This document shows, piece by piece, positions 14,416 through 47,424 of a DNA stretch of 64,000 bases; positions within the stretch are counted from its first letter, which is position 1; the number at the start of each line of letters is the position of its first letter. The stretch is from Oopsacas minuta. Taxonomy: Eukaryota; Animalia; Porifera. The translations under genes and the position numbers were made by a program. Below the pieces are notes generated by a model. It searched no databases. It was not told where the DNA came from and worked only from the letters and a program-made list of their open reading frames with translations. Location of the stretch: contig JAKMXF010000018.1 in NCBI GenBank assembly GCA_024704765.1, forward strand, positions 30,339 through 94,338, given 5' to 3'.

Positions 14416-16407
14416 AAAAACATAACCACACGCTCTTCAATAATTTCTATCAACTAGTTTAGTAATTAACACCCATTATTTGTTAATTATCATATTCGCC
14501 ATCCACAGCATATGTTCTTAGCAACATCTCTGGTATTACAATATGAATAATTAGATTATAAACTAGTTTGTGTGGTGCTTAGGAATGCTATGCACTAGTG
14601 GGTGATAACAAATTGTATAAGAAAGGAGCCTAAGAGGACAGGAAATTAGAGAACTGCTATCACTGGCTTAGTGCCTAGAATATAAATTAACTATCCCCTG
14701 CTCAAACATTTCTAATATTCTATTAAAGCAAATTAGCTAGAATTTGTAAATATATAATAGGTGTCAAAATATGCAGAAGAATCCCAGAATTATGGAAATA
14801 TTTATATAAATATTCAACTACAAACAGACACTGAAACCAGTGTTATTTATCCGTATAAGTATCACACAATGTAGCTGACAGATACCACATTTCTCATATT
14901 ATTATTAGCATATTTACAGAATAGTTGCATATTTTTTACACCTTTTTAGTGACAACAGAAGTTTGCGTAATTGTTTTATTCGATAATTCCATTAAACCCT
15001 ATATACAAATATTCCTAATGAGCTGATGCTTCCAGTAGCTCTCTTCAAGGATGTTAATTTTACCTTAGCAACTCGTTAACCGCATAGGAATGTATACACG
15101 GCTGATTTCTTTGCTGATATTATACAATGTGGCAATAAAGAGTTAACTACATTCCTGGAATATAATGTACATAATCGTTGCTAGGCAACATAATATCATA
15201 AAAGAAATTCATCAAAGGTTCATTTAAGTTACAGGTGATAGTTCCAATTTGATAGCCACAGGGTTATACAACAAATATAATGTTCAGCAATCTAAGATTG
15301 TGAGAAGCTGTAAGGCCCGCGGGTTCCTAAGATATGGGCGGGAAAGTTGTACCAAGGGGGTCACGGATTAATTAGGATAGGAAATGGGACGGTAGGGTCC
15401 AGCCCTCTCCGCAGATGTTATCCTTACTAAATATAATATCTTTATGATCATGTTAGAGTAATTAATAATCTGGGGAAGGATATACACCAAATTACATGAA
15501 TTACAGCTTCTAGGCGTTAAATGAGATTATTCATCTGTGCATGCCATATGATATCTAATTAATAGCGGGTGATTTAATATATTCCTGAGTGAATAGTTCC
15601 ATATAAGATCGTAACTATCTGGGAGAGGAGCCCACCTTGGACGGTGTAGCAGTAATTCAATAATAGCAGATGCAGTATTTGTATCTTTTGATGTTATATT
15701 TGAGGGGCAATGCTCTTCTTATCTAGCGCTGTTCGAATTAGTTCAGAGTTGTACTTTCCTTAAAATATAGCAATAATTATGTATTAGCCCACAGTGTAAT
15801 TGGATGGAATTAGGTCTTTAGAATATTCTAGAACATCTTTCAAGAGCTGGGGCGTTGGATTACACACGTTTTTACTGTAATTGAATAAATAATATCGAAA
15901 GAATTATGATAAGAGAGGTGTTATCTTTATTGTCTAGTCATATTGACTTACAGATAGTAATAATATATTTAGGCGGGGAAACACCTGCTTTCACGCGGGA
16001 AAAATTGATAAAAAATGAAGATTTGAGGCTGGGAAAATGAAAAATTCTGAGATAAAGTTCAGAAAATTTCCTTCTAATCGATTAAGGACAAACGCAGTTG
16101 CTTAAGATGGAAGGTTACATTCCAACTAACAAACGCGGTAACTATAATACTGTATTATTAAACACCTAGTCTGTAAGGTTAATGTTAAACCATCTATTTT
16201 CAATATATTTTCAATTTCGCAGAGACACAGCTAAACTCTAGACAGCATATGTATGTACAACAACAAGAACAACAAGAACAACAAGAACAACGAGAGGACA
16301 CATTAACGTAGTCCAGCTGAACTTTAAACTAAGGTCTATACAGTTAGTCTAAACATAAGGTAAAGTATAAATAGACGAATATACAACATTCAATATTAAT
16401 ATACAAA

Positions 16408-17838
16408 ATGCTATCTGTTAGTGTAATATTTATAATCCAGGTTATTACTGTATGCTGGAGCAGGTCAATACCTGATGCCACACAACCACCCACATTTAAT
16501 CCGCGGGATCTATGGGATATGCTGAATACAGTAGAGGATGAAGAGAGGACAAAGGAGTACTCAAGGTTCGAACCTGTGTCACAAAGATTCGGTACTTCAC
16601 CTTCCTCATTATATCTAATGGAATTCTACAGATTGATTGGTGAGGATCAGCTGATTGATTCTACTATTAGCACATTCAGTGCATCAACATTTGAAGGTGA
16701 TAAATATATAATATATTCTTAGTTTCAGTAGATATATACACTGATTACGGATAAGTGAACGAATATTTACGCATAATCAGTTCCCTACAATGATTATTCA
16801 GTTGGTATTACTCCGGTTAATACAAACATAATTTGAAAGTCTGTTGGTGTTGGTATTAACGAATTTCTACAGTATTTAATATCCCAGAGATTGCGAAAAC
16901 ACCTTTTAAACAACTCCACTTAATCCGGATAAGTTCCCGTAATAAACGTCTCCAATATTCGTATACAGACACAGATATACATAATTCAAATATGATGACT
17001 ATTGTCTGTAGCTTAATTAGACATGTAAGGTTCTGGTAAAAGCTCTCTCAAATACGTTAATTAATTCAGATTACTTATTGTAAGGATTTTAATGGATTCT
17101 GGCGCCGTACTATTGAAATAGATATGTTATGACCAACACGCAACCATACATATTGCTAATTTACAGAATGCAACTGGTTACATTGTGTGTATTGAAATTG
17201 GTTTTAGAATTAGAAAGGCAAATGCGTTACAAGAATATTTGTAAGCAAATAAGATATTCTATTTCCTACAACCAAATTGGACAGCATATGATGTAACGTA
17301 AACATTTATGAATATGTGTCTGAATATTGTAATCGTATTCTCCTTTCTAGATATAAACCAGCTACGATTATCAAGACCTAATTATCAACACCTCTACAGG
17401 ATGGTACTATCTAAATCTGCTATAAAAGAGCACTACACTGAGGGTACAGACACACAACTGTGGATACCTATATACAACCATGAGCTTATCAGACAAATAA
17501 ACAAAACAAAAAATGATAATTTAAGGGTTTGTATAGCTCAGAAAGATAAGAGGAAGACTCAGTATTGCTACTTCCTAGACACAACACAACTCGACTTAAC
17601 TGAACCAAACGGACACTCATGGATAGGCATAGATATAGCTGAACTAACGAGATTAGAAATGGCATCAGGAAATGACAAGAAACACTTGTATTTATACTTC
17701 TCATTGAGTGGGTGTGTGGCAGTGAATGACAGATGTAACTCAGTAAGCCTATTGGATGATAGTTACGTACAAGTATTGAAACTAGCTAATCCACGTGTTC
17801 CTTTTGTCATAATGACAGATGTGATGTCACTTACTTGA
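16408..17838 (+). CDS. Secreted TGF-beta-propeptide-like protein (258 aa, 2 exons) with no detectable mature cystine-knot domain
   Basis: Signal peptide MLSVSVIFIIQVITVCWS, followed by PSSLYLMEFYR (resembles the PxYMxxLY latency motif), HSWIGIDI (WxxFDI-like) and RVPFVIM (PFLVV-like prodomain end). Exons 16408-16696 and 17351-17838 join in phase (G|AT). ATTAAA at 17864. Confidence 0.6.
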
Positions 17839-34610: not shown

Positions 34611-37600
34611 ATGAAACTCAATTCTTCTGCCAACAAACATCAGTGGAAATCAGTCCTAGCCTTTAGAGTATGTTTACTTTATTGTTTGTTTGTAAACAAT
34701 TTATTGTTGTTTATTTGTAGGAACCAAGTGGAATCCCCTCCCTACAACACCTTACTCATAACAGCTGTTCTTGTTCAAACTGCAAGCTGGCTACCAAGAA
34801 GTTAAGTAGAGGGAGTCCTCATAATGGAGGGCAGTGTCTGTCCAGACGAGCTGAGATTAACCTCAGACTGGGAGATCGTGTAGCATTTAAGGGTAAGACA
34901 GGTGAGTATCCTGTCCTGTGTGTCTATGACTAGTAATTGAGTTAATGCATTATTATAGGAATAGTGAGATATATGGGAGTAATGGATTCTAAGTTTGAGG
35001 ATGGAGATTTATTTGCTGGAATTAAGCTAGATGATCCTCTAGGGGATCATGATGGTGTTGTTAAGGGTAAGAGGTACTTCTCCTGTCCTGACAAGCATGG
35101 TATCATGGTACCAGCTGCTAGTGTAGCTATGTTACTACCTAGAGAGGTGAGAACCATTATATAATGTATTATTTTTATTATTATTATTATTGTAATTAGA
35201 TGAAGCAGAAGACTCAGGACGGATTGAACCTTCTTCCAAAAGACAAACAGTCTAAAGTTAGGTAATAACACCTTATAAATCAGCTGATAGATCAGCTGTT
35301 TTATTAATAATTTATTTGTAGCGCTACTCAGACTTCACCTATTTCCCCTCACGGTAGAAAGGGTGTTCCTACTAAACCCTCTCTGACCAACAGACTCCTA
35401 GCAGAGCTCCCAGACTCCAGATTCTATAGGTCTCCCTCTCCTGATTCAGAGCTAAAGGAACTCAGTGAGATATCCGACTGGGCAGCTAGTTGGGGAGGGG
35501 ATCATCAGGCCTGGGCTATGGCCGGGACTCTTGAGAGACTTAAGAGGGCTAATAGACGGGGTGCACAGGAACAGAACTGGCAGAGAGTACTGTTGTATTT
35601 GGAGCAGGAAATGCCTGATGAGTTGAGAGGAGAGCTAGAGACTATTCAGCAGCTCAGGGCTCAAATAGGAATAGTTAGAGAGGAGAGAGAGGTTATAGAG
35701 AGGGAAGGTAAAGATTCTCATATTGTTATCAGTAAGCAGGATATGTCACAGGAAATCGCTGATATTAACAATAAGATTCAAGTAAGTATATACTATTGTA
35801 TGTACAGTTATACTGTGTATTCTATCTGTATACTGTATGTAGGAAGAGATGCATAAATTCTCATTGCTACAGACAGCTATAGAAGAAGAGAAAAGGCTTA
35901 GAGAGAGTATTAAGGTATTTTAACTCTTAATAGTATTAGCTTATACTTGTACAGTGTATACCGGTTATAAGAAGTAGTAATACATGTTCTTAACACCGGT
36001 ATAAATATACAGGAATATATGGTAACAAGTTTGCAGAGGCATACACTGTATTCCCAGGACTGTTAATCTGTATATCTGACCTATAACCAAGAGAATATTT
36101 ATAGTCTTCTAATTAATCGTTAAAGTAATCTTAGAATTATCCAGGATACTTCTGTAGGAGCAGAGCTTAAAGAAGATGAGTACAGAGGAGCTAGACATAC
36201 TGGAGAGACAGCTAGCTCAACCTGTACACTGATATACTATATTATTGTGCTGTTATATATATGTAATGTTATCGCTATTAAACATGTATATGAGTTACAG
36301 TTATATCTAACACAGATGCATAGAAATGCCCTTTAGCATCGATTAACGGTAGTTAAGTGTATATGATTAATCATATGTGTAATCTTAACACATATAGCTA
36401 AATAGAGAGATGACAGACATAGACTTAGGTAATTACAATGATGACGAGCTAGAAGTACTAATGAAGAGGATAGCAATTGCTAAACAAAGGAAAGAGAAAA
36501 GAACTCCAGAGCCTTCATCTCCCCCTCTTATGAGAGGTAATCATACTCCAGAGACCTATGTAGAGGAATCTACAAACTATAATCACAGAGATAGAGATGA
36601 AAGTGTTAACTACAGACCAGATCCTGTAGAATACGTAGATAATAGCTATACACGTGATCACTATACTAAGGATAAAATCACTACCATAGAAGGTATGTAA
36701 TTGTAGAGGATTACTACTGGGAACATGTTCTCACTATTTTAATGCGTAGATAGTGATTCAGATGATTTAGAGAGTTTAGAGTCTTTCATTAATCAGAACT
36801 TAAGACCGGAACTATCAAATGAAGAATGGTAACTATAATTATTTGTTAATCAGTTGATCTTGTTAAATAATTCACATTCCAATCCAGGTTATTCGTATCT
36901 GCGTTATCTCATAAAACAGATCAAAGTAGGAAATGTAAAGTATCTGATTGGTTAAATATAGGATCAGAAGATCAGTTCGATGACATGCCGGATTATAAAC
37001 CTACAAGGAGAACCGGTATATTATATTATAAAAATATCTAATTTGATTAACACTAACATTCCATAATTACTGTAGTCCCCCCATAGATACGAACTTGTAC
37101 AGTAGGTATTCATTTATACCTTGTAGTCCACCTTCTCTCCCTATCCCACTTTCCTTAACACCTCCGAATGGTGTCCAGACTGAGCTAATCATCCCCTCAT
37201 TAACTCCAATCAGTCCATATTGTAGTTGTGGCGTCACTCTGTGTATCTGCCTGTAGTCTGTAGTCATGACGTAAGCAGCTAATCCCTCTTTGACCTAATA
37301 CGTTAGTATAATACACTAATTATTAATTAACTCCCAATAAAGTTAAATTGACTGTAATTACATTGTTAGCTAGATGAATAGCCTCTTCCTCTGTATCAAA
37401 TGCTCTCACAGGTATCACAGGTCCAAATGTCTCTTCATTCCATATATCCATATCCTCAGTTAGTCCTGATAAGAGAGTAGGTTGATAGAAATGTCCGTTA
37501 CCTATCTTATCCCCTCCCACTAGCACCTCTCCTCCTTTTTCTACACCGTCTGTAATGTGACGTGTTACCTTATCAACAGCTGATTGGTTTATGAGAGGAC

Positions 37601-40600
37601 CTAGCTCTGCCCCTTCTTCTAGTCCGTCTGCTACCCTCTTACCCTTAATCAGGTCTACACACCTCTCTAACACCTCTTCTATCCGGCTGGTGTGTACTAG
37701 TACTCTATTAGCACTGATACAGGTCTGTCCGTTGTTACGGAACTTAGTTGTGTTGATAGCACGCATGACTACCTCAATATCAGCTGATGGGAATATTATA
37801 AAGGGGGCATTACCGCCTAATTCTAAGGTTACCTTCTTAACAGTACTGCTACACAACTTGTATAGCTTCTTACCAACAACACAGCTCCCTACAGTGTATG
37901 CAGGTTATGAGAACACCCTTGAGAGCAGCAATACATGATCTTATAACCAGTATCTACTGTATTACCTGTAAATGATAGTCCCTGTATGTCTGGGTTGGTA
38001 CACATCTCCTCTCCCACTGCCGGGGTGCTAGACTTGTCTGACGTCACTACGTTAAACACCCCTCTAGGAATCCCTGCCCTATCTCCCAGCTCCGCTAGTG
38101 CCAGGGCAGACAGAGGGGTCTCTTCAGAAGGTTTGAGTACCACCGTGCATCCGGCTGCCAGAGCAGCAGCTGTCTTTCTCAGAGGTAGCAATACAGGGAA
38201 GTTCCATGAGGTTATGAAGGCACAGGCTCCTATAGGCTCTCTGTATAGTAAGCTTTGCGTCATGCCGGATTGTGTCGGTATAATTTCTCCGTATATACGC
38301 CTAGCTGCTTCGGAATACCACTATAATACACAGCAAATAATACAATACAGTAAATGCTACCACAATTGTGGAGACTACACAGTATATAAATTTTATATGA
38401 CACATTACCTCGAGGTAAGAGGCCCCGTAGTCAACCTCCCCTAGACCTTCCTTTAGGACCTTCCCTGATTCTAGCGTTATTAGTGTCCCCAGTGCATTCC
38501 TATGCTCCATAACCGTATCTAACCAGCGTCTCAACAACTGTCCTCTCTCATTTCCACTCTTTAGCCTCCAACCCAGCTGAGCAGTCCTAGCACAAGCTAT
38601 AGCATCCCTGATATCTGATTGGTTCATATCAGGTACTGATCCTATCTTCTCTAGGGTAGACGGATTAATGACGTCATATGATTTAGAGGATTTGATCCAT
38701 TCTCCATTCACATACGCCTGAGACTTTAATAGATGTGATACTGAGCCTAATGCACGCTGCATTCCTATTACACAACCTGGTTGCTAGGTTAATAACACTA
38801 TAATTATAGATTATCGCAGAACTCCTTCTCCATTGTCACGATACGCTCGTGTACCCAGAGCTCAATCCCCCCTCTTCAGCTCCAGGGGGCAGGACATGGA
38901 TACAGGAGGTCTATTTAAGATATCATCAGGTCCCAGTAGGTATCTGGAGAGGGTAGAGAAGAGGAGTCTCGCCTCACCACCCCTCCATGACCCCTCAGAT
39001 ATAAATAGTAAGTTATTATAATATTCTCATTAGTTATACCATAAGCTCTGGCTATATATACGAAATTATTGTTATAGGAGATTATGTAGCGGACACATCT
39101 CCGATAGACTCACCCATTAGACAGTCTCCTGACTGGGAGAGAGAGATCACCTCTTCCCCCAGGACAATAGACCAGATGACAGGACACAGATACTCCCCAC
39201 AGGTGTCATTATATAATTAGATTATACAATCATAAATTATAATCACATACCATATAGCGTTGTGAGATAAGTAACACCCGAGTTACCTAGTAGACGGCAG
39301 GAATGTGTCTACTTTTAGCTTGTTAATATTATTACACAATTTCTCTCATAATTACTCTTGTCTGCAATCATCTATTTTAAAATATAAAACCATTCTAGAA
39401 TCTACAGCGATTATAACACATATAACCTAGCTAGCCATAATCTTATAAATCCTTACAAATGTAAATATCTGACATAGATTAGACTCAATTCTTGTGAGTA
39501 AATAGCAGTTATACATTTATTAGAATTATGGTTAAGTTAATACACTCAATATATAAGTACTGTGTTAGGCTGTATTTAACTTGTACAATACAAATTGAAT
39601 TAGAATCAAACTGGACCACCCAGAGCATACACAGGTCCCTGAGGACCAGATCTCTAGCTTCCAGCAGTCTAGTGTATTCTTAACTTCCTTGCCTTATTGG
39701 CCATTATTACAGACTCAATTAAAGGAACATTTTACGATAATAAAGCAAGCTATATTACACGCAATACAATGCGAGGCTACAGACACTATTGGAATAATTG
39801 TGTCAGATATTCTGTTCTATGTCAGACGGTATAAGAAGTATTTCTCTAAACAAGATCATATAATGCTTATAGAAATCCTATACGATATGGTATGTAGGGA
39901 CCCCCTTCCTCCTCACGGTCTATCCGCCTGTCTAGTTGCACTCATCGACCTGCTCCTCCCCCAGAGACTGATCACCAGATCTGACCTCACTCTACGCTGG
40001 CGTCCCCTATACGATCTGTACCTCCGTATAAAGAAGGAGTCCATAACTAGAATGCACCCCTCTCTATGGGGGCTACTAGACCCCATCGTACAGCTAGCCG
40101 CCCTGGCATCCTCCTACTTCCCTGAAGAAGCTACAGCAGAGATCCTGAGAGAGCTATACCCCCAGATCCACCCCTCCCTCTCCTCTAACACATATATGCT
40201 TGTACTAACTCTACTGACCGCATTCCTACCCGTAGATGTACCTCCTCATGTATGGGGACTATGGTTTAATGACGTCACTAAGTTATGGTTAGGCTCTGGG
40301 GTTATACTACCTAAGGGGGAGTGTAGAGTCCTGTATCTCCTCTCTCGTCTGGCTCCTCGTACTGTCGGGAGAGTAGATTGGTCGCCACACTTGCATCAGC
40401 TGTTTGATCAGCTGTTGAGGAGTGTACACATTCCTGTAGGACCACTTAAATTCACATTCAAGTCTCGTACAGTTCTTCCTATACAGAAGTTCTCTAAGAT
40501 AATAGTGTTCTCAATATATCAGGGATCACAGACCCTATCTCATCTCAAACAGTTGATGCTTGCTTTAGAAACATTCTTCCATCCTTCTAATGACGGGAGA

Positions 40601-43600
40601 CATCTTAAGAATCTTATAACGCTAGTCACTACTCTGGTATCAGATTTTATGGTTCGTATAACCAGAGAGTCAGGGGTAAAACCTGTTCCTGCCTCTTTGC
40701 AGATACCCCCTGAGTTCCGATTGACCGAGGGGGATATCGATCAGTTCGTGACAACTGTCCTACCTTCTTTGAGACTAGCTCTCTTCACCAAGGAGGAGAG
40801 GTACCAGTTCCAAATAGCTGGGTGTCTGGGCCCCCTAAGCACAATAAGACCCCGTATGTTTGTTCCTGAAATGATTGAGGAGTGTAAGGAGGCTCTTGTC
40901 TCAGTGACAGAGCCCCATAGACTGACGTCACTGCTCAGCTGTTTATATTCTGTATCAGCTTGTCTTACTACAGGTCTGCCTGATTTCCCAGAGGGTCGCA
41001 CTTACGTCATCCCGTTACTACACGCTATACTACCTGGTATAGACGTTAATGACGCGTTTAAGACTGCTCTATCTCTCAAAGTAATCACCCAGCTGATCTC
41101 TGGAATACCATTGGTTGACTGTTCTAAGTCTCCGCCTATGAATAGCATCGGAAGAGAACTAGCAGCTCAGACCGCTCTTTTTGAGGATTTTATTCTGGAA
41201 TTTATTTCTAAAATGTTTCATTTCTTGCAGTGTGCTACCACTTCTGTAACTCTAGGAGAGCTGGAAGGAATGCAGACAGGTCCTCATATACATTCCATTG
41301 ATATAGGTATGTCGTTACAATCAAATATAGTGTTACTGTTCCCTGTTAGTCTATCAGTGGTCCTATCTTCTTGCCCTCTCTCCCTCTACGAGAGAGCTGT
41401 TTCTAAGATATTCCAGCTGACCTGTGGAATGTTTGCCTCTGTTGATAAGCCAGGCACCAGTCCCTATCCTGTAATACTATCCCATCTGACAGCTTGCCAA
41501 CACGGGAGTGATACAGCCCGTATGTTCTTTTCTCATTGTCTGCAGTGTATCAAGCGTGTAGCTTCTGAAATACAGCTGGAAAAGGAGGAGAGAGGGGATC
41601 CTGAGATTAAATGGAATCTGGAGCTTCTCTCCTCGGTGGTACAGTACGGGGCTAGACACGCCCTCTCTCATCTCTCTGACATAAGAGAGGTGTTAAGACT
41701 TACTCGATACTCTAAATGTAAGGAGATATACCAGATGTCCTCAGGACTACTTTGTGACGTAATCACTTGTCTCAGCGGTGTATACATTCTCCCTAAATAC
41801 CAATTCGGTGTAGATCTAGACCTCTCCCCCTCAGACAGGGACTATCTAGAGGATTGGGGTACATACTTCCAGAAGAATGAGGTCAGAGCTCAATGGCATA
41901 TTCCTAGCATCGAGGAAATAGAAGGAGTGGAGTCTCTATTACAAGAATTCTTGTTACCTGAATTATTAAAGATAAGAGAATTTGTATCAGGTTCTATAGA
42001 GCTATCACGTGATGAGTTACAGAATATATTAACACTTATAGAGTCAGGATTCCTTGCTTCAGCCTTTAGATTCATAGAAGTTACTGACCCTCCTCTCTCT
42101 GAATATGATCAGTTAATTACTGAGGATCTTGTGTACCTAACAAGACACATTATAACATGTAACAGGCCTGTGTACAGGTTAGAATCCTATAAAATGGATG
42201 AATTATGTCCTCTCATACATTCTCTGTCTGTTAAGCTGTTTGCAGAGAGACAGCATGAGACAGAATCCATGAGACTCCTGGTGTCTATCATTCAATCACT
42301 CCTATCTCCCTCTCAGACCGTGTCCTGCTGGAGTCAGCTGAGATTATTCAAGATAGATAAACACATCATGTCAGTCAGGACAGCTCATAAACGCCTCTAC
42401 TCTCAGCTATACTTACTCTACCGTCTGGAGTCTACACACGATTGTGTAGGCTTAGAAGATCACGTTGACATCGTAACTGTTTCTAAGGAATGTCTGCTTA
42501 TTGACTTGTTTAACCTAGCCACCTCTGAGTACGTCATAACCCGTCAGTATGCTCAGTACCAACTGGACAAGTGCTTCACACGGTACCTGTTTAGTAGGAG
42601 GTTCATGTTCCCACATATACTGCCCCTTCTAGGAGGAGACACACCCAGAGAGAGACTCAAGGGGGCACTCCGCACCCTCCTCTACAACAAGAATCTATTT
42701 TTAGAATACATATGTTGTAGACCTGATCTCATATCACAACTAATTCCATCTCTCCTATCCTGTAACCATACAGACAAGCAGCCTATTATAGATCTCCTAT
42801 ACTCCGTATTTGGTGTTATACGACAGCTGGTCGGTCTCCTGGACCCTGAACTAACCAGATTCTCAACTGAGACACAGAGGACTGCCCTGGAGAGGTTGGG
42901 TGTTCCTCTCCCAAGTGAGACCCTCGTAAGAGTCATGTCAGTCCGTGATAGCAAGCGTGATAGTGATATGAAGGCTTACCTGGTATTTGTGTCCGATCTG
43001 ATTAAATTCATCAAGGCCCCCTCTTCCTCTCTCTTCTTTGAGTTTGCTGTCTCCATTCTCTCTTCCCTTCCTCACCCGACCCTCCCTCGTCCTCCTGAGC
43101 TAATTCCTACCCTCCTCCCCCTCTTGGTACACGATACAGTTAGTGTCAGATACACAGCTATGTCTATCCTTGAGAGTATTTTAAAGTTTAAGAGGAATTC
43201 TTACAAGAAAATACTGCTGGTAACGATTGAACAGGTAATGGATAGTGTAGCATCTCTCAAACTGGAGCCAAGCAACACTAGTGTGAAATTGGAATTCGGA
43301 GAATGTGAAGAGAACAGATGGCTCTGTATTATGGAGGATGACCTGACAAGAGAAGCTATGTCGCAATCAGAATGGAATGCTATTACATTTGTAGATAAGA
43401 TGTACGTCGGTTACGTCAGACCCTGGCCTAGCGACTTACAAATATTTGCACCAGCTAAGGACCAGAGCATCAGTACAGATTATGATAGAGAGGACAGACA
43501 TATCATCAGCTGGTTCCAGGATGAGAAAAACGCTAAGACCCTGATTACATTCCTCTCGTTGGAAGAGAGGAAGAATGCAGAGGAATTCCGTATACATGTA

Positions 43601-45711
43601 GAAGAGGTATTCAAGGCTTTGGCTAAGAACTACGGAGCTGAATCAGTGAGATTATTCAGTGATCAACTGACTAAACTTATGACGTCACAACAGGAGACTG
43701 AGCAGAGATTAGGCTTAGAACTAGCAGCTGGTATTCTCATGGGGTCTAAGCACTGGCGGTGGGAACAAGTCTCAGAGCTTGAGAAGATTTTGGCACCAGC
43801 GTTCTTCCAGGGCATAAAGGTAATAAGTAAGGAGACCTCTCCTAATTGGGCTACATTCCTGAGCCGTATTTTATTCAAGAGAGATCCTAGACGCTTCTTC
43901 TGGCTGTGGAATGGTCTGTTAAAGGACCTGATGGATCCATCAGATTCCTGTTTCACTAATGCTATGAGATTACTGCTATGTGATTGTGCTGTATTTTACG
44001 GTTCTTGGAGAATACCCGGTTTTAAGCACGCTCTGTTAAAGAGATTAATTCCTCATCTATCTAGTCCCTACCAGATGCTGCGATCTAGGATTGCTAGATT
44101 TCTGGTCACCGTGTTCTCGGAAGAGGGTCCTCTTGCTGTTTCCCTCTACTCCCCCTCTAGACAGCTGTTCCTCTCCAAGTTAGAGGTACTCTCCCTATCT
44201 CAGGGTAAATTATCATCTCTAGACACTCCTGATAGAGACAGAGTGTTATGTGAAATTAAGGTGGTAGCTGAATTCCTGACTAGGACAGCTAAACTACTCA
44301 GATTCGCACCAGAGCTGCTGTTGCTAGGGGAGACCATTCTGACACATAGGAATGCTATAGAAGAGGATGAATTAACTCACATACTGGACTCCCTTGCTCA
44401 CTCCTTATCTCTCCTAGAAATACCGCATCAAGCAGTACCTACACTAATTGCTGTATTCCAGAAAATGCCATATGAAGAGAATTGGCAGACTAAACTAGGC
44501 AAGCTGTACCTCTTCCAAGTTCTGACATTTGGGAATTTATTTACTGTGCTGTCACACGGGGCCCTGGTTGTATCAGCTATTAGAAATGTACTCCTGTCTC
44601 TGCTGGGAGATCAAAGGGTAGAGGTTAGGGACCAGGCGGCTGAGTCTCTATCCGGATTGGTTCGATGCGGATTCTACTCCAATGATGACGTCATATCGTT
44701 TGTACAGGATTTCACTGAGCAGTTGGGGCCCCCGCCTCAAGGGCGCAGAGCTCGGAAGCGTATAGAGTCTGACCTACTGGCTAAGAAGCACTCTGGACTA
44801 TTGGGACTGGGTGCTATAGTCCTCGCTTATCCCTACTCGATCCCTCAGTTCCTCCCGACAGTCCTCATGCTCGTGGGAGCATTCCTACAAGCGACACCTC
44901 CCCTCCAAGGGTCCGCTAAACATGTCCTCTCAGAATTCAAGCGGACACATTGGGACCAGTGGGAGGTACACAGGGTTGCCTTCTCTGACGCTCAGCTGGC
45001 TGACCTACGGGGGATGTTGGTATCTCCAACTTACTATGTTTGATTTTGTGAGATTAGTTTTGTAATTTAATTAAAATCTCTGTTGTATTTGTTATTCATT
45101 CATTAATGGTAGTATACTGCTTATTATATACATTCCTAATGACTATTGTCGTTACTAGGCTCCTGTCATCAGCTCCTCCCTCCGTCACGGTAACGCTCTC
45201 CCTCTTAGACAGACCCCTTCCCCTAAGTTTTCTTCTGGACAGATTGCTAGTCCCCTCGAGAGGGTATCCTCTCCAGGGTACCAGTTGCCCCCTCATAGAC
45301 ACATGACACCTACTCATGATGATCCTACACAGGTACCTATCCGTGTTTAGTGTAACGATTACTGTACTCAGTGTTTGTATTTACTTGTTTGTTTAGGAAT
45401 TAGTTTCATCAAGGGAGAGACCAGTAGCAGAGCCTAGAGTAAGCTATACAGATACTACAATACGTATTAGTATGTTATAGTTATAATATAGATATCAATG
45501 ATACAGCAGAGAAGTATAGCTAGTCCACAGACCAGAATGCCTGTAAGACAGAATATAGCTAGACCTCAAATCCGCACTCCACAAGGTTTGTTTGTTTGTT
45601 TGTTTGTTGTGTATATATAAATTGTTGTTATTCACAGCTCTGAGCGGCAGAACACCCCGTTCCTTACAAGCTCCCTCTCCTATCAGAGCCCGCTCAAGCA
45701 GAGACAGCTGA
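34611..45711 (+). CDS. CAP-Gly + coiled-coil protein with long S/P/R-rich tail; host gene for two nested genes
   Basis: CAP-Gly motif [31 protein letters not shown] and coiled-coil exons. The 3' exon chain is phase-compatible: 36750-36828, 36888-37015, 38810-39007, 39078-39202, 45159-45332, 45397-45438, 45492-45585, 45638-45711. Confidence 0.7.
37067..38762 (-). CDS. ALDH5A1: Succinate-semialdehyde dehydrogenase (NAD+), nested antisense
   Basis: [23 protein letters not shown], catalytic ELGGNAPF and [30 protein letters not shown]. Confidence 0.93.
39528..45043 (+). CDS. PSME4: Proteasome activator PA200/Blm10; essentially one 5.4-kb exon
   Basis: 1784-codon ORF with [70 protein letters not shown] and the C-terminal proteasome-gating motif SPTYYV. 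The start is inferred from a micro-exon ATG GTT AA (39528-39535) spliced to 39604; this start is uncertain. Confidence 0.93.
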
Positions 45712-45844
45712 TTAAACAGCTGTGTATATAGGATGTAACATTTTGTGCTGAATTGTTTTTATTTTGGTGTTTTTATATATGTGATACATTCAAAATATGT
45801 TTATTAAATTAATCAATCTTCTGTTTATACTTTTGTGAGTTAGC

Positions 45845-47424
45845 ATGTCAGCTGATTGGAGTATAGACGGGAGGGCAGAGGTGTTAGCTATCAGGAACAG
45901 GATAAGAGAGGTGGTGGAGTATATGAAGTTTGAGTTATGTCCGGGGAAAGAGCTGATTGAGCTGACGTTAGGTGACCCTACCTGCTGTGGTATACTGCCT
46001 CCTCATCCCGATGTTCTTAAGGCAGTCTCTGACTCGGTCCTATCCGGTCTGCATAACGGGTACAAAATGTCTAAAGGGTCTGAGGAGGCACGGCAGGCTC
46101 TGGCAGATAAGTACAGTTCTCCAGGCTCTGTCCTATCACCAGATGATGTGTATCTAACTCATGGATGCTCTGGTAAGTTACAGTTAACCTCGTTAATAAG
46201 GACATTGTATGACAGTCTGTTGGTTTTCGTAATAACGAGGTTATGTTATGAGTATAGGAGCGATACAGTTCGCTTTCCAGGCTCTCCTGTCTCCCGGACA
46301 GAATGTGTTAACACCTCGTCCAGGATTCAGTGTATATAACACAATGTGTAGTTCCTTACAGATAGAGAATAGACTGTATAGGCTAGATCCTGCCAGGACA
46401 TACGAGGCTGATCTGACAGATTTGGAGAGTAAAATAGACTCAAATACCGGCGCTATTGTAGTGAATAATCCATCTAATCCTTGCGGTAGTGTATACTCCC
46501 ATCAACACCTCATGGATATACTCACGGTAAGTATAGTAATCAGCTGATTAGCATATGTTAGTACAGTTCTGTTAGTTAGCTGAGAAGTACAGACTTCCTA
46601 TAATAGCAGATGAAGTATACGGTAATATGACATACAGTGGTAACAAGTTCTATCAGCTGGGATCTATCTCTGAATCAGTGCCTGTACTCTCTTGTAGCTC
46701 TCTAGCTAAGATATGGTTAGTTCCTGGCTGGAGACTAGGCTGGCTTGTTATACATAACAAGAAAGGAATATTAAGACAGTCTGTTTATGATTCTTTTAAT
46801 AAGCTGAGTACTCTAACGCTTGGTCCCTGCTCACTCATACAAGGTAAGCTACTGTGTTACGTCATCAGGACAACTGATTATGTTATTATTAGGCGCCCTC
46901 CCTAAGATACTGTCAGTTCCACAGAGCTGGCATGATGACGTCACTAGGCATATTGAGTGTACTGCTCTCACTTGCTACAATTCTCTACAGAAAGCTCCTG
47001 GCTTAACTCCTATAAAACCACAGGTAAGCTTGATACAGTAGTGTATATGCAACTTATGTGACGTCATATGTATAGGGAGCTATGTACATTATGATAGAGA
47101 TAGATTTCTCAAAGTTTCCTGATATTCCTAACATATCAGAATTCGTGCAACTACTCTGTAAGGAAACTTCTGTCAAACTCATGCCTGGATCTGTAAGTAT
47201 CTATCATTTATACCGGTTATAAGATCATGTATTGCTGCTCCTGAGAGTGTTTCTATAACCTGTGTACACTGTATTAATTATTATTATTATTATTATTATT
47301 ATTGCATGATTAGTGCTTTGAGACGAACACAGCCATCAGGATTGTAACAGTAGACAAGAAAGAGAAGATGCAAGAGGCCTGTGACAGGATCTGTGAGTTC
47401 TGTAGCAATCACTTCAAACCTTAA
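45845..47424 (+). CDS. TAT: Tyrosine aminotransferase
   Basis: LGDPT, NGYKMSKG, PRPGFSVY, NNPSNPCGSVY, IADEVY, PLP-lysine motif SLAKIWLVPGWRLGW and C-terminal ACDRICEFC. Confidence 0.93.
46179..46243. mobile_element. About 65-bp hairpin MITE family B (Tc1/pogo-like ends) filling TAT intron 1
   Basis: Inverted repeat TAACCTCGTTA (46185-46195) / TAACGAGGTTA (46233-46243). Related copies with the TTAATACGAACACCAACGGAC core lie at about 16810-16872, 18780-18835 and 54833-54890. Confidence 0.7.

What the first reader, a model, noticed from the sequence alone, without database searches (positions are those of the whole stretch)
39204..45158. PA200/PSME4 as one 5.4-kb exon nested on the SAME strand inside a host intron
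Seen: the 1784-codon ORF has no introns, although neighbours such as clathrin are intron-dense and vertebrate PSME4 has dozens of exons. An in-frame stop at 39596-39598 and no ATG before the conserved LPYW region mean it needs a tiny 5' exon; TTATTAG|AATT-ATG-GTT-AA|GT at 39517-39537 fits. Same-strand nesting is rare because the host must ignore the guest's poly(A) signal (ATTAAA near 45070). Inference: either a retrocopy that replaced the parental gene, or a mutually exclusive product of the host pre-mRNA, for example trans-splicing at 39523 plus early polyadenylation.
Basis: partly seen in the sequence, partly recalled or inferred. Interest (0 to 1): 0.8.

Follow-up and report, generated by a model that had tools for sequence, protein, structure and literature searches.

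The report
PA200 gene nested in sponge intron
A complete, expressed proteasome-activator gene (PA200/PSME4) sits as one uninterrupted exon, on the same strand, inside an intron of a CAP-Gly gene in a glass sponge. The layout is real and conserved, but it is ordinary for glass-sponge genomes.

Summary
An open frame at 39599-45043 encodes a full-length PA200/PSME4. It has no in-frame ATG before the conserved N-terminus. It lies on the same strand inside a 5,956-nt GT..AG intron (39203-45158) of a CAP-Gly gene (34611-45711). One RNA-like run holds the host junction 39202^45159, and shows no joint inside the guest.

Four other glass-sponge-like assemblies keep the same nest, the same single-exon PSME4 and the same signals. 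These are the host donor, a TTAG|A acceptor 7-20 nt before the start position, ATTAAA 12-27 nt after the stop, and the host acceptor 82-89 nt further on.

It is not conserved, and an RNA contig runs unbroken across its donor. The RNA graph branches instead at the conserved acceptor 39603|39604, most likely through spliced-leader addition. The leader itself was not displayed.

In the window and its closest relative, the start codon that the other three genomes have as ATG is CTG.

The retrocopy idea and the "cut out of the host transcript" idea are neither shown nor excluded.

Nested genes, single-exon genes and leader trans-splicing are published for glass sponges. This scan has already reported same-strand nests elsewhere in this genome.

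The parts
34611..45711 (+). Host gene: CAP-Gly domain protein, about 15 exons, ATG 34611, stop TGA 45709-45711. Ordinary introns are 50-75 nt, three are about 160-250 nt, and the two long ones each hold a nested gene.
   Evidence: Pfam CAP_GLY on 34964-35164. Every exon core is conserved as protein in L001-L003. The GT..AG chain is frame-consistent throughout.
38810..39007 (+). Host exon (Ser/Pro-rich), two exons before the guest.
   Evidence: tblastn conservation in L001 and L002. Phase-1 acceptor matches the phase-1 donor at 37015.
39078..39202 (+). Host exon immediately before the guest. It ends ...CCCCACAG|GT in phase 0.
   Evidence: Conserved with its donor CAG|GT in L001-L004. X4 contig leaves the genome at 39203 for 45160-45174.
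39203..45158 (+). Host intron of 5,956 nt (GT..AG) that contains the whole PSME4 gene.
   Evidence: Only one in-frame solution. The junction is seen in X4.
39444..39449 (+). TATAAA, candidate guest promoter element. Others are at 39383 and TATATAAG at 39550. This is a weak call in the window.
   Evidence: All four relatives keep TATAAATAG once in the same donor-to-acceptor interval, against 1-2 copies per 20-25 kb locus. The 9-mer itself is absent in the window.
39524..39535 (+). It is present as sequence but not supported as an exon.
   Evidence: Not conserved. X4 contig 16 is collinear across its donor.
39586..39603 (+). Conserved acceptor tract CAATACAAATTGAATTAG| of the guest. Probable spliced-leader acceptor.
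   Evidence: CTGCAATACAAACTGAATTAG|A in L001 and L003, AATTAG|A in L002, CTGCATAGAACTAGTTAG|A in L004. X4 contig 16 ends at 39631, so its end node is 39602-39631.
39604..45043 (+). PSME4/PA200 exon from the acceptor to the stop codon. There are no introns.
   Evidence: Open frame. Pfam PF16507, PF23096, PF11919. E about 3e-196 to human PA200 chains, one stretch. No joints in RNA contigs. Collinear with four orthologues, with no gap of 8 aa or more outside the variable extreme N-terminus.
39611..39613 (+). CTG at the codon that is ATG in L001, L003 and L004. A at -3 and G at +4. Candidate non-AUG start.
   Evidence: No other letters in the DNA or RNA contigs. L002 also has CTG.
45070..45075 (+). 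ATTAAA poly(A) signal of the guest, 27 nt after the stop and 89 nt before the next host exon.
   Evidence: ATTAAA is kept in all five genomes, 12-27 nt after the stop. Spacing to the host exon is 82-89 nt.
45136..45140 (+). CTAAT, branch-point-like motif of the host acceptor.
   Evidence: The block CAT.C.TAA.G.CT....GTT.CTAG|GC is conserved in L001-L003.
45159..45332 (+). Host exon immediately after the guest (Ser/Pro-rich), phase 0, donor CAG|GTACCT.
   Evidence: Conserved as protein in L001-L004. Joined to 39202 in X4. X4 contig 23 ends at 45186, so its end node is 45157-45186.
45638..45711 (+). Last coding host exon with stop TGA 45709-45711.
   Evidence: Conserved acceptor, and coding block conserved in L002.
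37067..38762 (-). Aldehyde dehydrogenase gene nested antisense in the preceding host intron 37016-38809.
   Evidence: Pfam Aldedh on three exons. Same place in L001-L004. Single in-frame host solution 37015^38810.

Best explanation
This is the sponge's ordinary, intact PA200/PSME4 gene.

Shown:
- It is encoded by one exon of about 5.4 kb.
- It lies on the same strand inside a 5,956-nt intron of a CAP-Gly gene.
- The host splices across it (39202^45159).
- The guest RNA is collinear with the genome.
- The whole arrangement and its signals are kept in four other glass-sponge-like genomes.

Inferred:
- The guest is its own transcription unit, started from a TATA-type promoter inside the host intron.
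- Its 5' outron is removed at the conserved acceptor 39603|39604 by addition of the spliced leader known from glass sponges.
- It ends at ATTAAA 45070, about 60-90 nt before the host's 3' splice site.
- Translation starts at CUG 39611 (A at -3, G at +4), the codon that is AUG in three relatives, or at an AUG supplied by the leader.

My odds for each step:
- Nesting: 0.95.
- One exon: 0.97.
- Acceptor used: 0.75.
- Partner is the leader: 0.6.
- Own promoter: 0.6.
- CUG start: 0.5.
For: - Identity: Pfam PSME4 domains. One-stretch match to human PA200 29-1842, E about 3e-196. C-terminus SPTYYV identical in five genomes.
- Host: the exon chain is phase-consistent, with a single solution for each long intron, and its exons are conserved as protein.
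- RNA junction: X4 has a loose end at 39203, CTCCTGTCATCAGCT, which equals 45160-45174 and is unique in the window. X1-X3 are DNA-like and show no such end.
- No joints over 39121-45120.
- Acceptor: X4 contig 16 (depth 147) is collinear over 39174-39631. Contigs of these runs overlap by exactly 30 letters at branch points, as seen in X2 and X3. So there are branches at 39203|39204 and 39601|39602. The bin 39321-39520 has depth 147 only, against 750-900 in the gene body.
- The acceptor, ATTAAA, host donor and host acceptor are conserved in all four relatives.
- TATAAATAG occurs once in the donor-to-acceptor interval of each of the four relatives.
- Start: ATG in L001, L003 and L004; CTG in the window and L002. 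The 64-84 codons before the first in-frame ATG are constrained: dN 0.27-0.34 with dS saturated.
- Background: nested genes, single-exon genes and a trans-spliced leader in glass sponges (PMC10282587; PMC7986045).
Against: - The leader was not seen. The table of loose ends was cut (29 not shown), and only one read-laying run was allowed.
- The branch at 39602 could also come from adaptor read-through at a fixed 5' end.
- The host junction rests on one contig with 15 loose letters, in one run whose kind is not on record.
- The window lacks the TATAAATAG 9-mer of its relatives.
- RNA covers the whole interval 39204-39601 at about a fifth of the guest's depth. That is what a host-derived precursor would also give.
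- The link from the CAP-Gly exons (up to 37015) to exon 38810 rests on phase and conservation only.
Confidence: 0.6

Rival explanations
1. The guest has no promoter of its own. PSME4 mRNA would be cut out of the host pre-mRNA by leader trans-splicing at 39604 and polyadenylation near 45090. Each host transcript would then yield either the CAP-Gly mRNA or the PSME4 mRNA, an operon inside an intron.
For: - RNA is collinear from the host exon through 39204-39631 at depth 147.
- The acceptor lies right before the start position in all five genomes.
- The poly(A) signal and the host 3' splice site are kept 82-89 nt apart.
- Leader trans-splicing is known in the clade.
Against: - A TATAAATAG box is conserved in the interval in all four relatives.
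- Unspliced host pre-mRNA explains the depth-147 contig equally well.
- An earlier follow-up on this genome (s1-205311) found nothing showing that intronic genes are cut out of host transcripts.
- Contigs cannot show single molecules.
Confidence: 0.2
2. There is no splicing at the 5' end. The conserved block 39586-39604 would be the guest's initiator, transcription would start at about 39600, and the branch in the RNA graph would be adaptor read-through at a fixed 5' end.
For: - TATA-like strings lie 35-50 nt upstream of the block in four of five genomes (TATATAAG at 39550).
- Adaptor loose ends exist in X4.
Against: - The block ends in a typical TAG| acceptor like the host's own acceptors.
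- The 5' UTR would be only 7-20 nt.
- The conserved TATAAATAG lies at a variable 117-258 nt upstream, which fits an outron rather than a fixed start.
- Other follow-ups report leader-joined RNA at such acceptors in this genome (s1-201567, s1-211781).
Confidence: 0.15
3. One reading: a tiny ATG-bearing exon (39524-39535, or a first exon ending at 39535) is cis-spliced to 39604 and supplies Met-Val-Lys.
For: The joined reading ATG GTT AA|A ATC AAA CTG is in frame, with GT at 39536 and a 68-nt intron of typical size.
Against: - Not conserved. L001 has ATA, and L002 and L003 have no counterpart.
- L002 needs a start as much as the window does, yet has no in-frame ATG exon.
- X4 contig 16 is unbroken across 39535|39536, although the spliced path would be the deeper one.
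- The entering path ends in ..AG, not ..AA.
Confidence: 0.03
4. Origin by retroposition: PSME4 would be an old retrocopy that landed in the CAP-Gly intron and replaced an intron-rich parent.
For: - The gene is intronless over 5.4 kb and lies inside an intron.
- Human PSME4 has dozens of exons (general knowledge).
Against: - The same state and place occur in five genomes whose synonymous sites are saturated, so any such event is old.
- About 60% of transcripts in two glass sponges are single-exon (PMC10282587), so clade-wide intron loss suffices.
- There is no A-run after the 3' end.
- The neighbouring nested gene has introns.
Confidence: 0.12
5. Not nested: the exons on either side would belong to separate small genes.
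For: This was my own first reading from the minus-strand aldehyde dehydrogenase upstream and the aminotransferase ATG at 45845.
Against: - The RNA junction 39202^45159.
- Exon 45159 begins at an acceptor without a start codon.
- Phases match along the whole chain.
Confidence: 0.03

Closest known systems
Human PSME4/PA200 (PDB 6KWX, 6REY, 7NAQ, 8CVS) and yeast Blm10
   Same: - Same length class and same Pfam domains.
- One-stretch alignment over residues 29-1842 of the human protein.
- A C-terminal Tyr-Tyr-X tail, YYV here.
   Different: - One exon here, against dozens of exons in vertebrates (general knowledge).
- No AUG at the start position in this species.
- 26% or lower identity to non-sponge homologues.
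Nested single-exon genes of glass sponges, such as glassin in Aphrocallistes vastus and Oopsacas minuta (PMC10282587)
   Same: - A single-exon gene inside an intron of another gene, with the arrangement conserved between glass sponges.
- The clade has about 12% nested genes and about 60% single-exon transcripts.
   Different: - This pair (PSME4 in a CAP-Gly gene) is not described there.
- The paper does not give strand statistics.
- Here the guest is 5.4 kb and makes up over 90% of the intron.
Spliced-leader trans-splicing in hexactinellid sponges (Douris 2010 as cited in PMC7986045; A. vastus leader in PMC10282587)
   Same: A TAG| acceptor a few bases before the start position, kept in five genomes, with a branch in the RNA graph at that acceptor.
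   Different: The leader joined to this gene was not displayed. Operons are not reported for the clade.
Same-strand nests reported earlier in this scan for the same genome (s1-201553, three genes in an AGAP intron)
   Same: The host splices across same-strand guests, and guests carry leader acceptors.
   Different: Different locus. That report says the leader was seen in RNA, which I could not show here.

Membership tests
PA200/PSME4/Blm10 proteasome activators | PSME4 mid HEAT region, HEAT-like repeat region and PSME4 C-terminal domain | tested here: met
   PF16507 at 2.9e-59, PF23096 at 8e-47, PF11919 at 1.4e-25.
PA200/PSME4/Blm10 proteasome activators | Full-length collinearity with a solved PA200 | tested here: met
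   Query residues 18-1809 align to human residues 29-1842 of 1843 in one stretch, E about 3e-196.
PA200/PSME4/Blm10 proteasome activators | C-terminal hydrophobic-Tyr-X tail that docks into the 20S alpha ring (general knowledge) | tested here: met
   The protein ends SPTYYV in all five genomes. Docking itself was not tested.
PA200/PSME4/Blm10 proteasome activators | Binds and opens the 20S proteasome | not testable with these tools
   Needs biochemistry.
Same-strand nested (intronic) gene | Guest lies wholly between a donor and an acceptor that the host joins in RNA | tested here: met
   X4 contig joins 39202/3 to 45159/60. The guest occupies about 39604-45095.
Same-strand nested (intronic) gene | Flanking exons belong to one host gene that also has exons further away | tested here: inconclusive
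   Phase-consistent chain 34611-45711 with conserved exons. RNA was seen for one junction only.
Spliced-leader trans-spliced gene | 3' splice acceptor just upstream of the start codon | tested here: met
   TTAG|A lies 7-20 nt before the start position in five genomes.
Spliced-leader trans-spliced gene | Common foreign leader joined at that acceptor in RNA | tested here: inconclusive
   A graph branch at 39601|39602 is inferred from the end of contig 16. The loose letters were not shown.
Retrogene | Lacks the parent's introns | tested here: met
   Uninterrupted frame and no RNA joints.
Retrogene | Poly(A) remnant or target-site duplications | tested here: not met
   No A-run after 45075. None would be expected after long divergence.
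Retrogene | Intron-bearing parental copy, or a non-syntenic position in relatives | tested here: not met
   Same syntenic place and single-exon state in L001-L004. A second copy in this genome could not be searched for.
Operon-type co-transcription with the host | No promoter between the upstream unit and the guest | tested here: inconclusive
   TATAAATAG is conserved in the relatives' interval, which argues against. Collinear RNA across the interval is neutral.

The most novel reading that the evidence does not exclude
Host and guest would be alternative products of one transcription unit. Each CAP-Gly pre-mRNA would follow one of two fates: spliced across the intron, or leader-trans-spliced at 39604 and polyadenylated about 60-90 nt before the host 3' splice site to give PSME4 mRNA. 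That mRNA would then be translated without a genomic AUG, from CUG 39611 or from an AUG in the leader. The conserved 82-89 nt spacing between ATTAAA and the host acceptor would be the switch.
Probability: 0.15. Interest if true: 0.55.

Novelty: new member of a known kind. Interest (0 to 1): 0.27.

Why it matters
It gives a clean, conserved example of how compact glass-sponge genomes pack an essential 5.4-kb gene into another gene's intron on the same strand. The guest's poly(A) signal lies under 90 nt from the host's 3' splice site.

It could serve as a test locus for how a host transcript reads through a guest's poly(A) signal, and for whether leader trans-splicing frees intronic genes.

The one point that goes beyond the published picture is small. 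In two of five genomes a conserved PA200 has CTG where its relatives have the ATG start.

Tried and rejected
- My first reading was two independent flanking genes: aldehyde dehydrogenase on the minus strand and the aminotransferase ATG at 45845. Conserved in-phase exons and the RNA junction overturned it.
- The look-up of sequencing runs listed no run on record as RNA. X4 was taken as RNA-like from its behaviour.
- I could not cover both sides of the 5,956-nt intron with long anchors or list all loose ends. I chose 39121-45120, so the acceptor side is seen only as loose letters.
- The leader sequence was not in the papers I could reach. Douris 2010 is not held, and two leader-tool papers say nothing on glass sponges.
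- Pfam gave nothing beyond CAP-Gly for the host exons.
- A search of 1.84 billion representatives with host exon 35320-35799 found only unnamed fragments and one unnamed 394-aa CAP-Gly protein. The host's orthology stays open.
- The species of L001-L004 could not be established.
- dS between the window and L002 is saturated, so no exact dN/dS could be given.
- A 21-nt A-rich replacement in X4 at 41821-41841 was judged a sequencing artefact.
Full report
**Observation**

The + strand frame is open from 39599 to the TGA at 45041-45043. The ORF listing reports 39689-45043 (1784 aa) from a TTG.

The product carries the three PSME4 Pfam domains. It aligns in one stretch (residues 18-1809) with residues 29-1842 of human PA200, E about 3e-196. 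The first in-frame ATG is at 39863, 84 codons after the start position, and two out-of-frame ATGs come before it.

**Surroundings**

At first sight the neighbours look independent. An aldehyde dehydrogenase lies on the minus strand (37067-38762) and an aminotransferase starts at 45845.

- **Exons.** Stop-to-stop segments of the + strand were searched one by one against three related loci. Fourteen exon cores on both sides of PSME4 are conserved as protein, and the two exons nearest the guest also in a fourth locus.
- **Splice chain.** A script listed all GT..AG pairs that keep the frame between neighbouring cores. The whole chain is consistent. Ordinary introns are 50-75 nt and three are about 160-250 nt. 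Each of the two long introns has exactly one solution, 37015^38810 and 39202^45159.
- **What I did not do.** Neighbouring exons were joined only inside that script, to test the frame. Exons were searched apart, by reference.

**RNA**

No run is on record as RNA. I laid the four runs offered on 39121-45120, which is 6,000 letters.

- **X1-X3 look like DNA.** Their contigs are collinear and their ends carry Nextera adaptor.
- **X4 behaves as RNA.** It gives 142 small contigs of uneven depth with TruSeq adaptor ends.
- **Host junction.** One X4 contig follows the host exon to 39203 and goes on with CTCCTGTCATCAGCT. That is window 45160-45174 and occurs once in the window. It is the predicted host junction; the G at 39203 equals the G at 45159.
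- **No introns in the guest.** No joint was reported anywhere in the stretch, so the guest RNA has no introns.

**Reading the contig ends**

In X2 and X3, neighbouring contigs overlap by exactly 30 letters at every break. Contig ends therefore mark branch points of a k=31 graph.

- X4 contig 16 (458 nt, depth 147) is collinear from 39174 to 39631.
- Its left end node, 39174-39203, is the host donor branch.
- Its right end node, 39602-39631, means that another path enters the guest exon. That path's last two letters are AG, and the letter before them is not T.
- This places the entry at the acceptor 39603|39604.
- Contig 16 is also unbroken across 39535|39536, the mini-exon's donor, although a spliced path there would be the deeper one.
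- The bin 39321-39520 has depth 147 only, against 750-900 in the gene body. So no well-expressed exon lies there.
- X4 contig 23 behaves the same way at the host acceptor, ending at node 45157-45186.

Limits:
- The loose letters at 39602 were among 29 rows not shown, so the partner was not seen.
- Adaptor read-through at a fixed 5' end could make the same branch.
- Contigs show neither starts nor single molecules.

**Relatives**

Four ENA assemblies hold PSME4 proteins 76-81% identical to this one. L002's record name suggests a sponge metagenome; the species of these assemblies were not established.

- **Synteny.** They share PQ-loop (-), CAP-Gly (+), aldehyde dehydrogenase (-), PSME4 (+), aminotransferase (+) and glutathione synthase (-).
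- **One exon everywhere.** In all of them PSME4 is one open frame of 1810-1834 codons. It has no gap of 8 residues or more outside the variable extreme N-terminus, and it ends SPTYYV.
- **Conserved signals**:
  - the host donor CAG|GT;
  - the guest tract CTGCAATACAAACTGAATTAG|A and its variants;
  - ATTAAA 12-27 nt after the stop;
  - a CTAA-type branch motif;
  - the host acceptor CTAG|GC, 82-89 nt after ATTAAA.
- **Possible promoter.** Each of the four relatives has TATAAATAG once between the host donor and the guest acceptor, 117-258 nt before the acceptor. That 9-mer occurs only 1-2 times per 20-25 kb locus. This points to a promoter of the guest's own followed by an outron of variable length. 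The window lacks the 9-mer and has only TATAAA at 39383 and 39444 and TATATAAG at 39550.

**Start codon**

- L001, L003 and L004 have ATG 8-20 nt after the acceptor. The window and L002 have CTG at the homologous codon, 7 nt after the acceptor, with a purine at -3 and G at +4.
- The window and L002 are each other's closest relatives (80.7% identity).
- DNA and RNA contigs show no other letter at that codon.
- The 64-84 codons between this CTG and the first in-frame ATG are conserved between the window and L002. dN is 0.27-0.34 with synonymous sites saturated, and the stretch [13 protein letters not shown] is nearly invariant. They are therefore translated.
- L002 offers no in-frame ATG exon in its 209-nt interval.
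- Translation therefore starts either at the CUG or at an AUG in whatever is spliced on.

**How it most likely works**

- **Shown:** a full-length PA200 gene in one exon sits in a host intron on the same strand. The host splices across it. The layout is conserved.
- **Inferred:** the guest is transcribed from its own promoter, receives the spliced leader at 39604, ends at the ATTAAA just before the host's branch point, and starts translation at CUG 39611.
- **Main rival:** the precursor is the host pre-mRNA itself. The depth-147 RNA across 39204-39601 fits either reading.

**Comparison with what is known**

Francis et al. 2023 (PMC10282587) report:
- 2,432 nested genes (12.4%) in A. vastus;
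- 12,409 of 19,578 single-exon transcripts in A. vastus and 9,872 of 16,340 in O. minuta;
- conserved nested single-exon genes such as glassin;
- a trans-spliced leader of about 37 bp.

PMC7986045 lists hexactinellid sponges among leader-using groups without reported operons.

Earlier follow-ups of this scan on other pieces of the same genome report leader-joined RNA at acceptors before start codons (s1-201567, s1-211781, s1-309850). They also report a same-strand three-gene nest in an AGAP intron (s1-201553), and no evidence that intronic genes are cut from host transcripts (s1-205311). I did not re-test those claims.

This locus is therefore a new, well-documented member of a known kind. The retrocopy idea is not needed, because intron loss is clade-wide and the state is old and syntenic. 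It cannot be excluded as the ancient origin.

**Verdict**

- The nesting is supported.
- The mini-exon is rejected.
- Trans-splicing is plausible but at 39603|39604.
- The shared-precursor and retrocopy readings remain open.
- Interest is modest. The missing AUG and the tight spacing between the poly(A) signal and the host splice site are the only points a specialist might follow up.

Noticed in passing
window 37067-38762 (-), host intron 37016-38809: An aldehyde dehydrogenase gene (succinate-semialdehyde dehydrogenase-like) with its own introns is nested antisense in the preceding intron of the same CAP-Gly host. Its ATG lies 48 nt from the host acceptor and has TAG|GA just before it on the minus strand.
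   Followed up: partly
window 45734-45778: A block TGTAACATTTTGT...TTTTGGTGTTTTTAT after the host stop is almost identical in L001-L003, far above the surrounding non-coding DNA. It could be a host 3'UTR element or the promoter of the aminotransferase gene (ATG 45845).
   Followed up: no
window about 34902-34958; L001 2288-2497; L002 5827-6036: The window has a short intron splitting the CAP-Gly exon (KGKTG | IVRYMGVMD). L001 and L002 lack it and read straight through. This is an intron presence/absence difference between glass sponges.
   Followed up: no
L001 about 16130-16440: A tandem array of a unit of about 38 nt (GAATATAAGAACTTGTTCTTAGAGAATATACTG...) fills the host intron after the CACAAG|GT donor in L001 only.
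   Followed up: no
window 41821-41841: X4 contigs carry a same-length 21-nt replacement rich in A (ACTAACCCCATAAAAAAAAAA), and the local summed depth is high (2767). It looks like a sequencing artefact rather than editing.
   Followed up: partly
window 45070-45159 and the same place in L001-L004: The distance from the guest's ATTAAA to the first base of the next host exon is 82-89 nt in all five genomes. The guest's 3' UTR before the signal is only 12-27 nt.
   Followed up: partly
window 35320-35799: The host's most conserved exon ([29 protein letters not shown]...) matches only unnamed proteins in 1.84 billion representatives. One is a 394-aa CAP-Gly protein. The host family has no name in Pfam beyond CAP-Gly.
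   Followed up: partly
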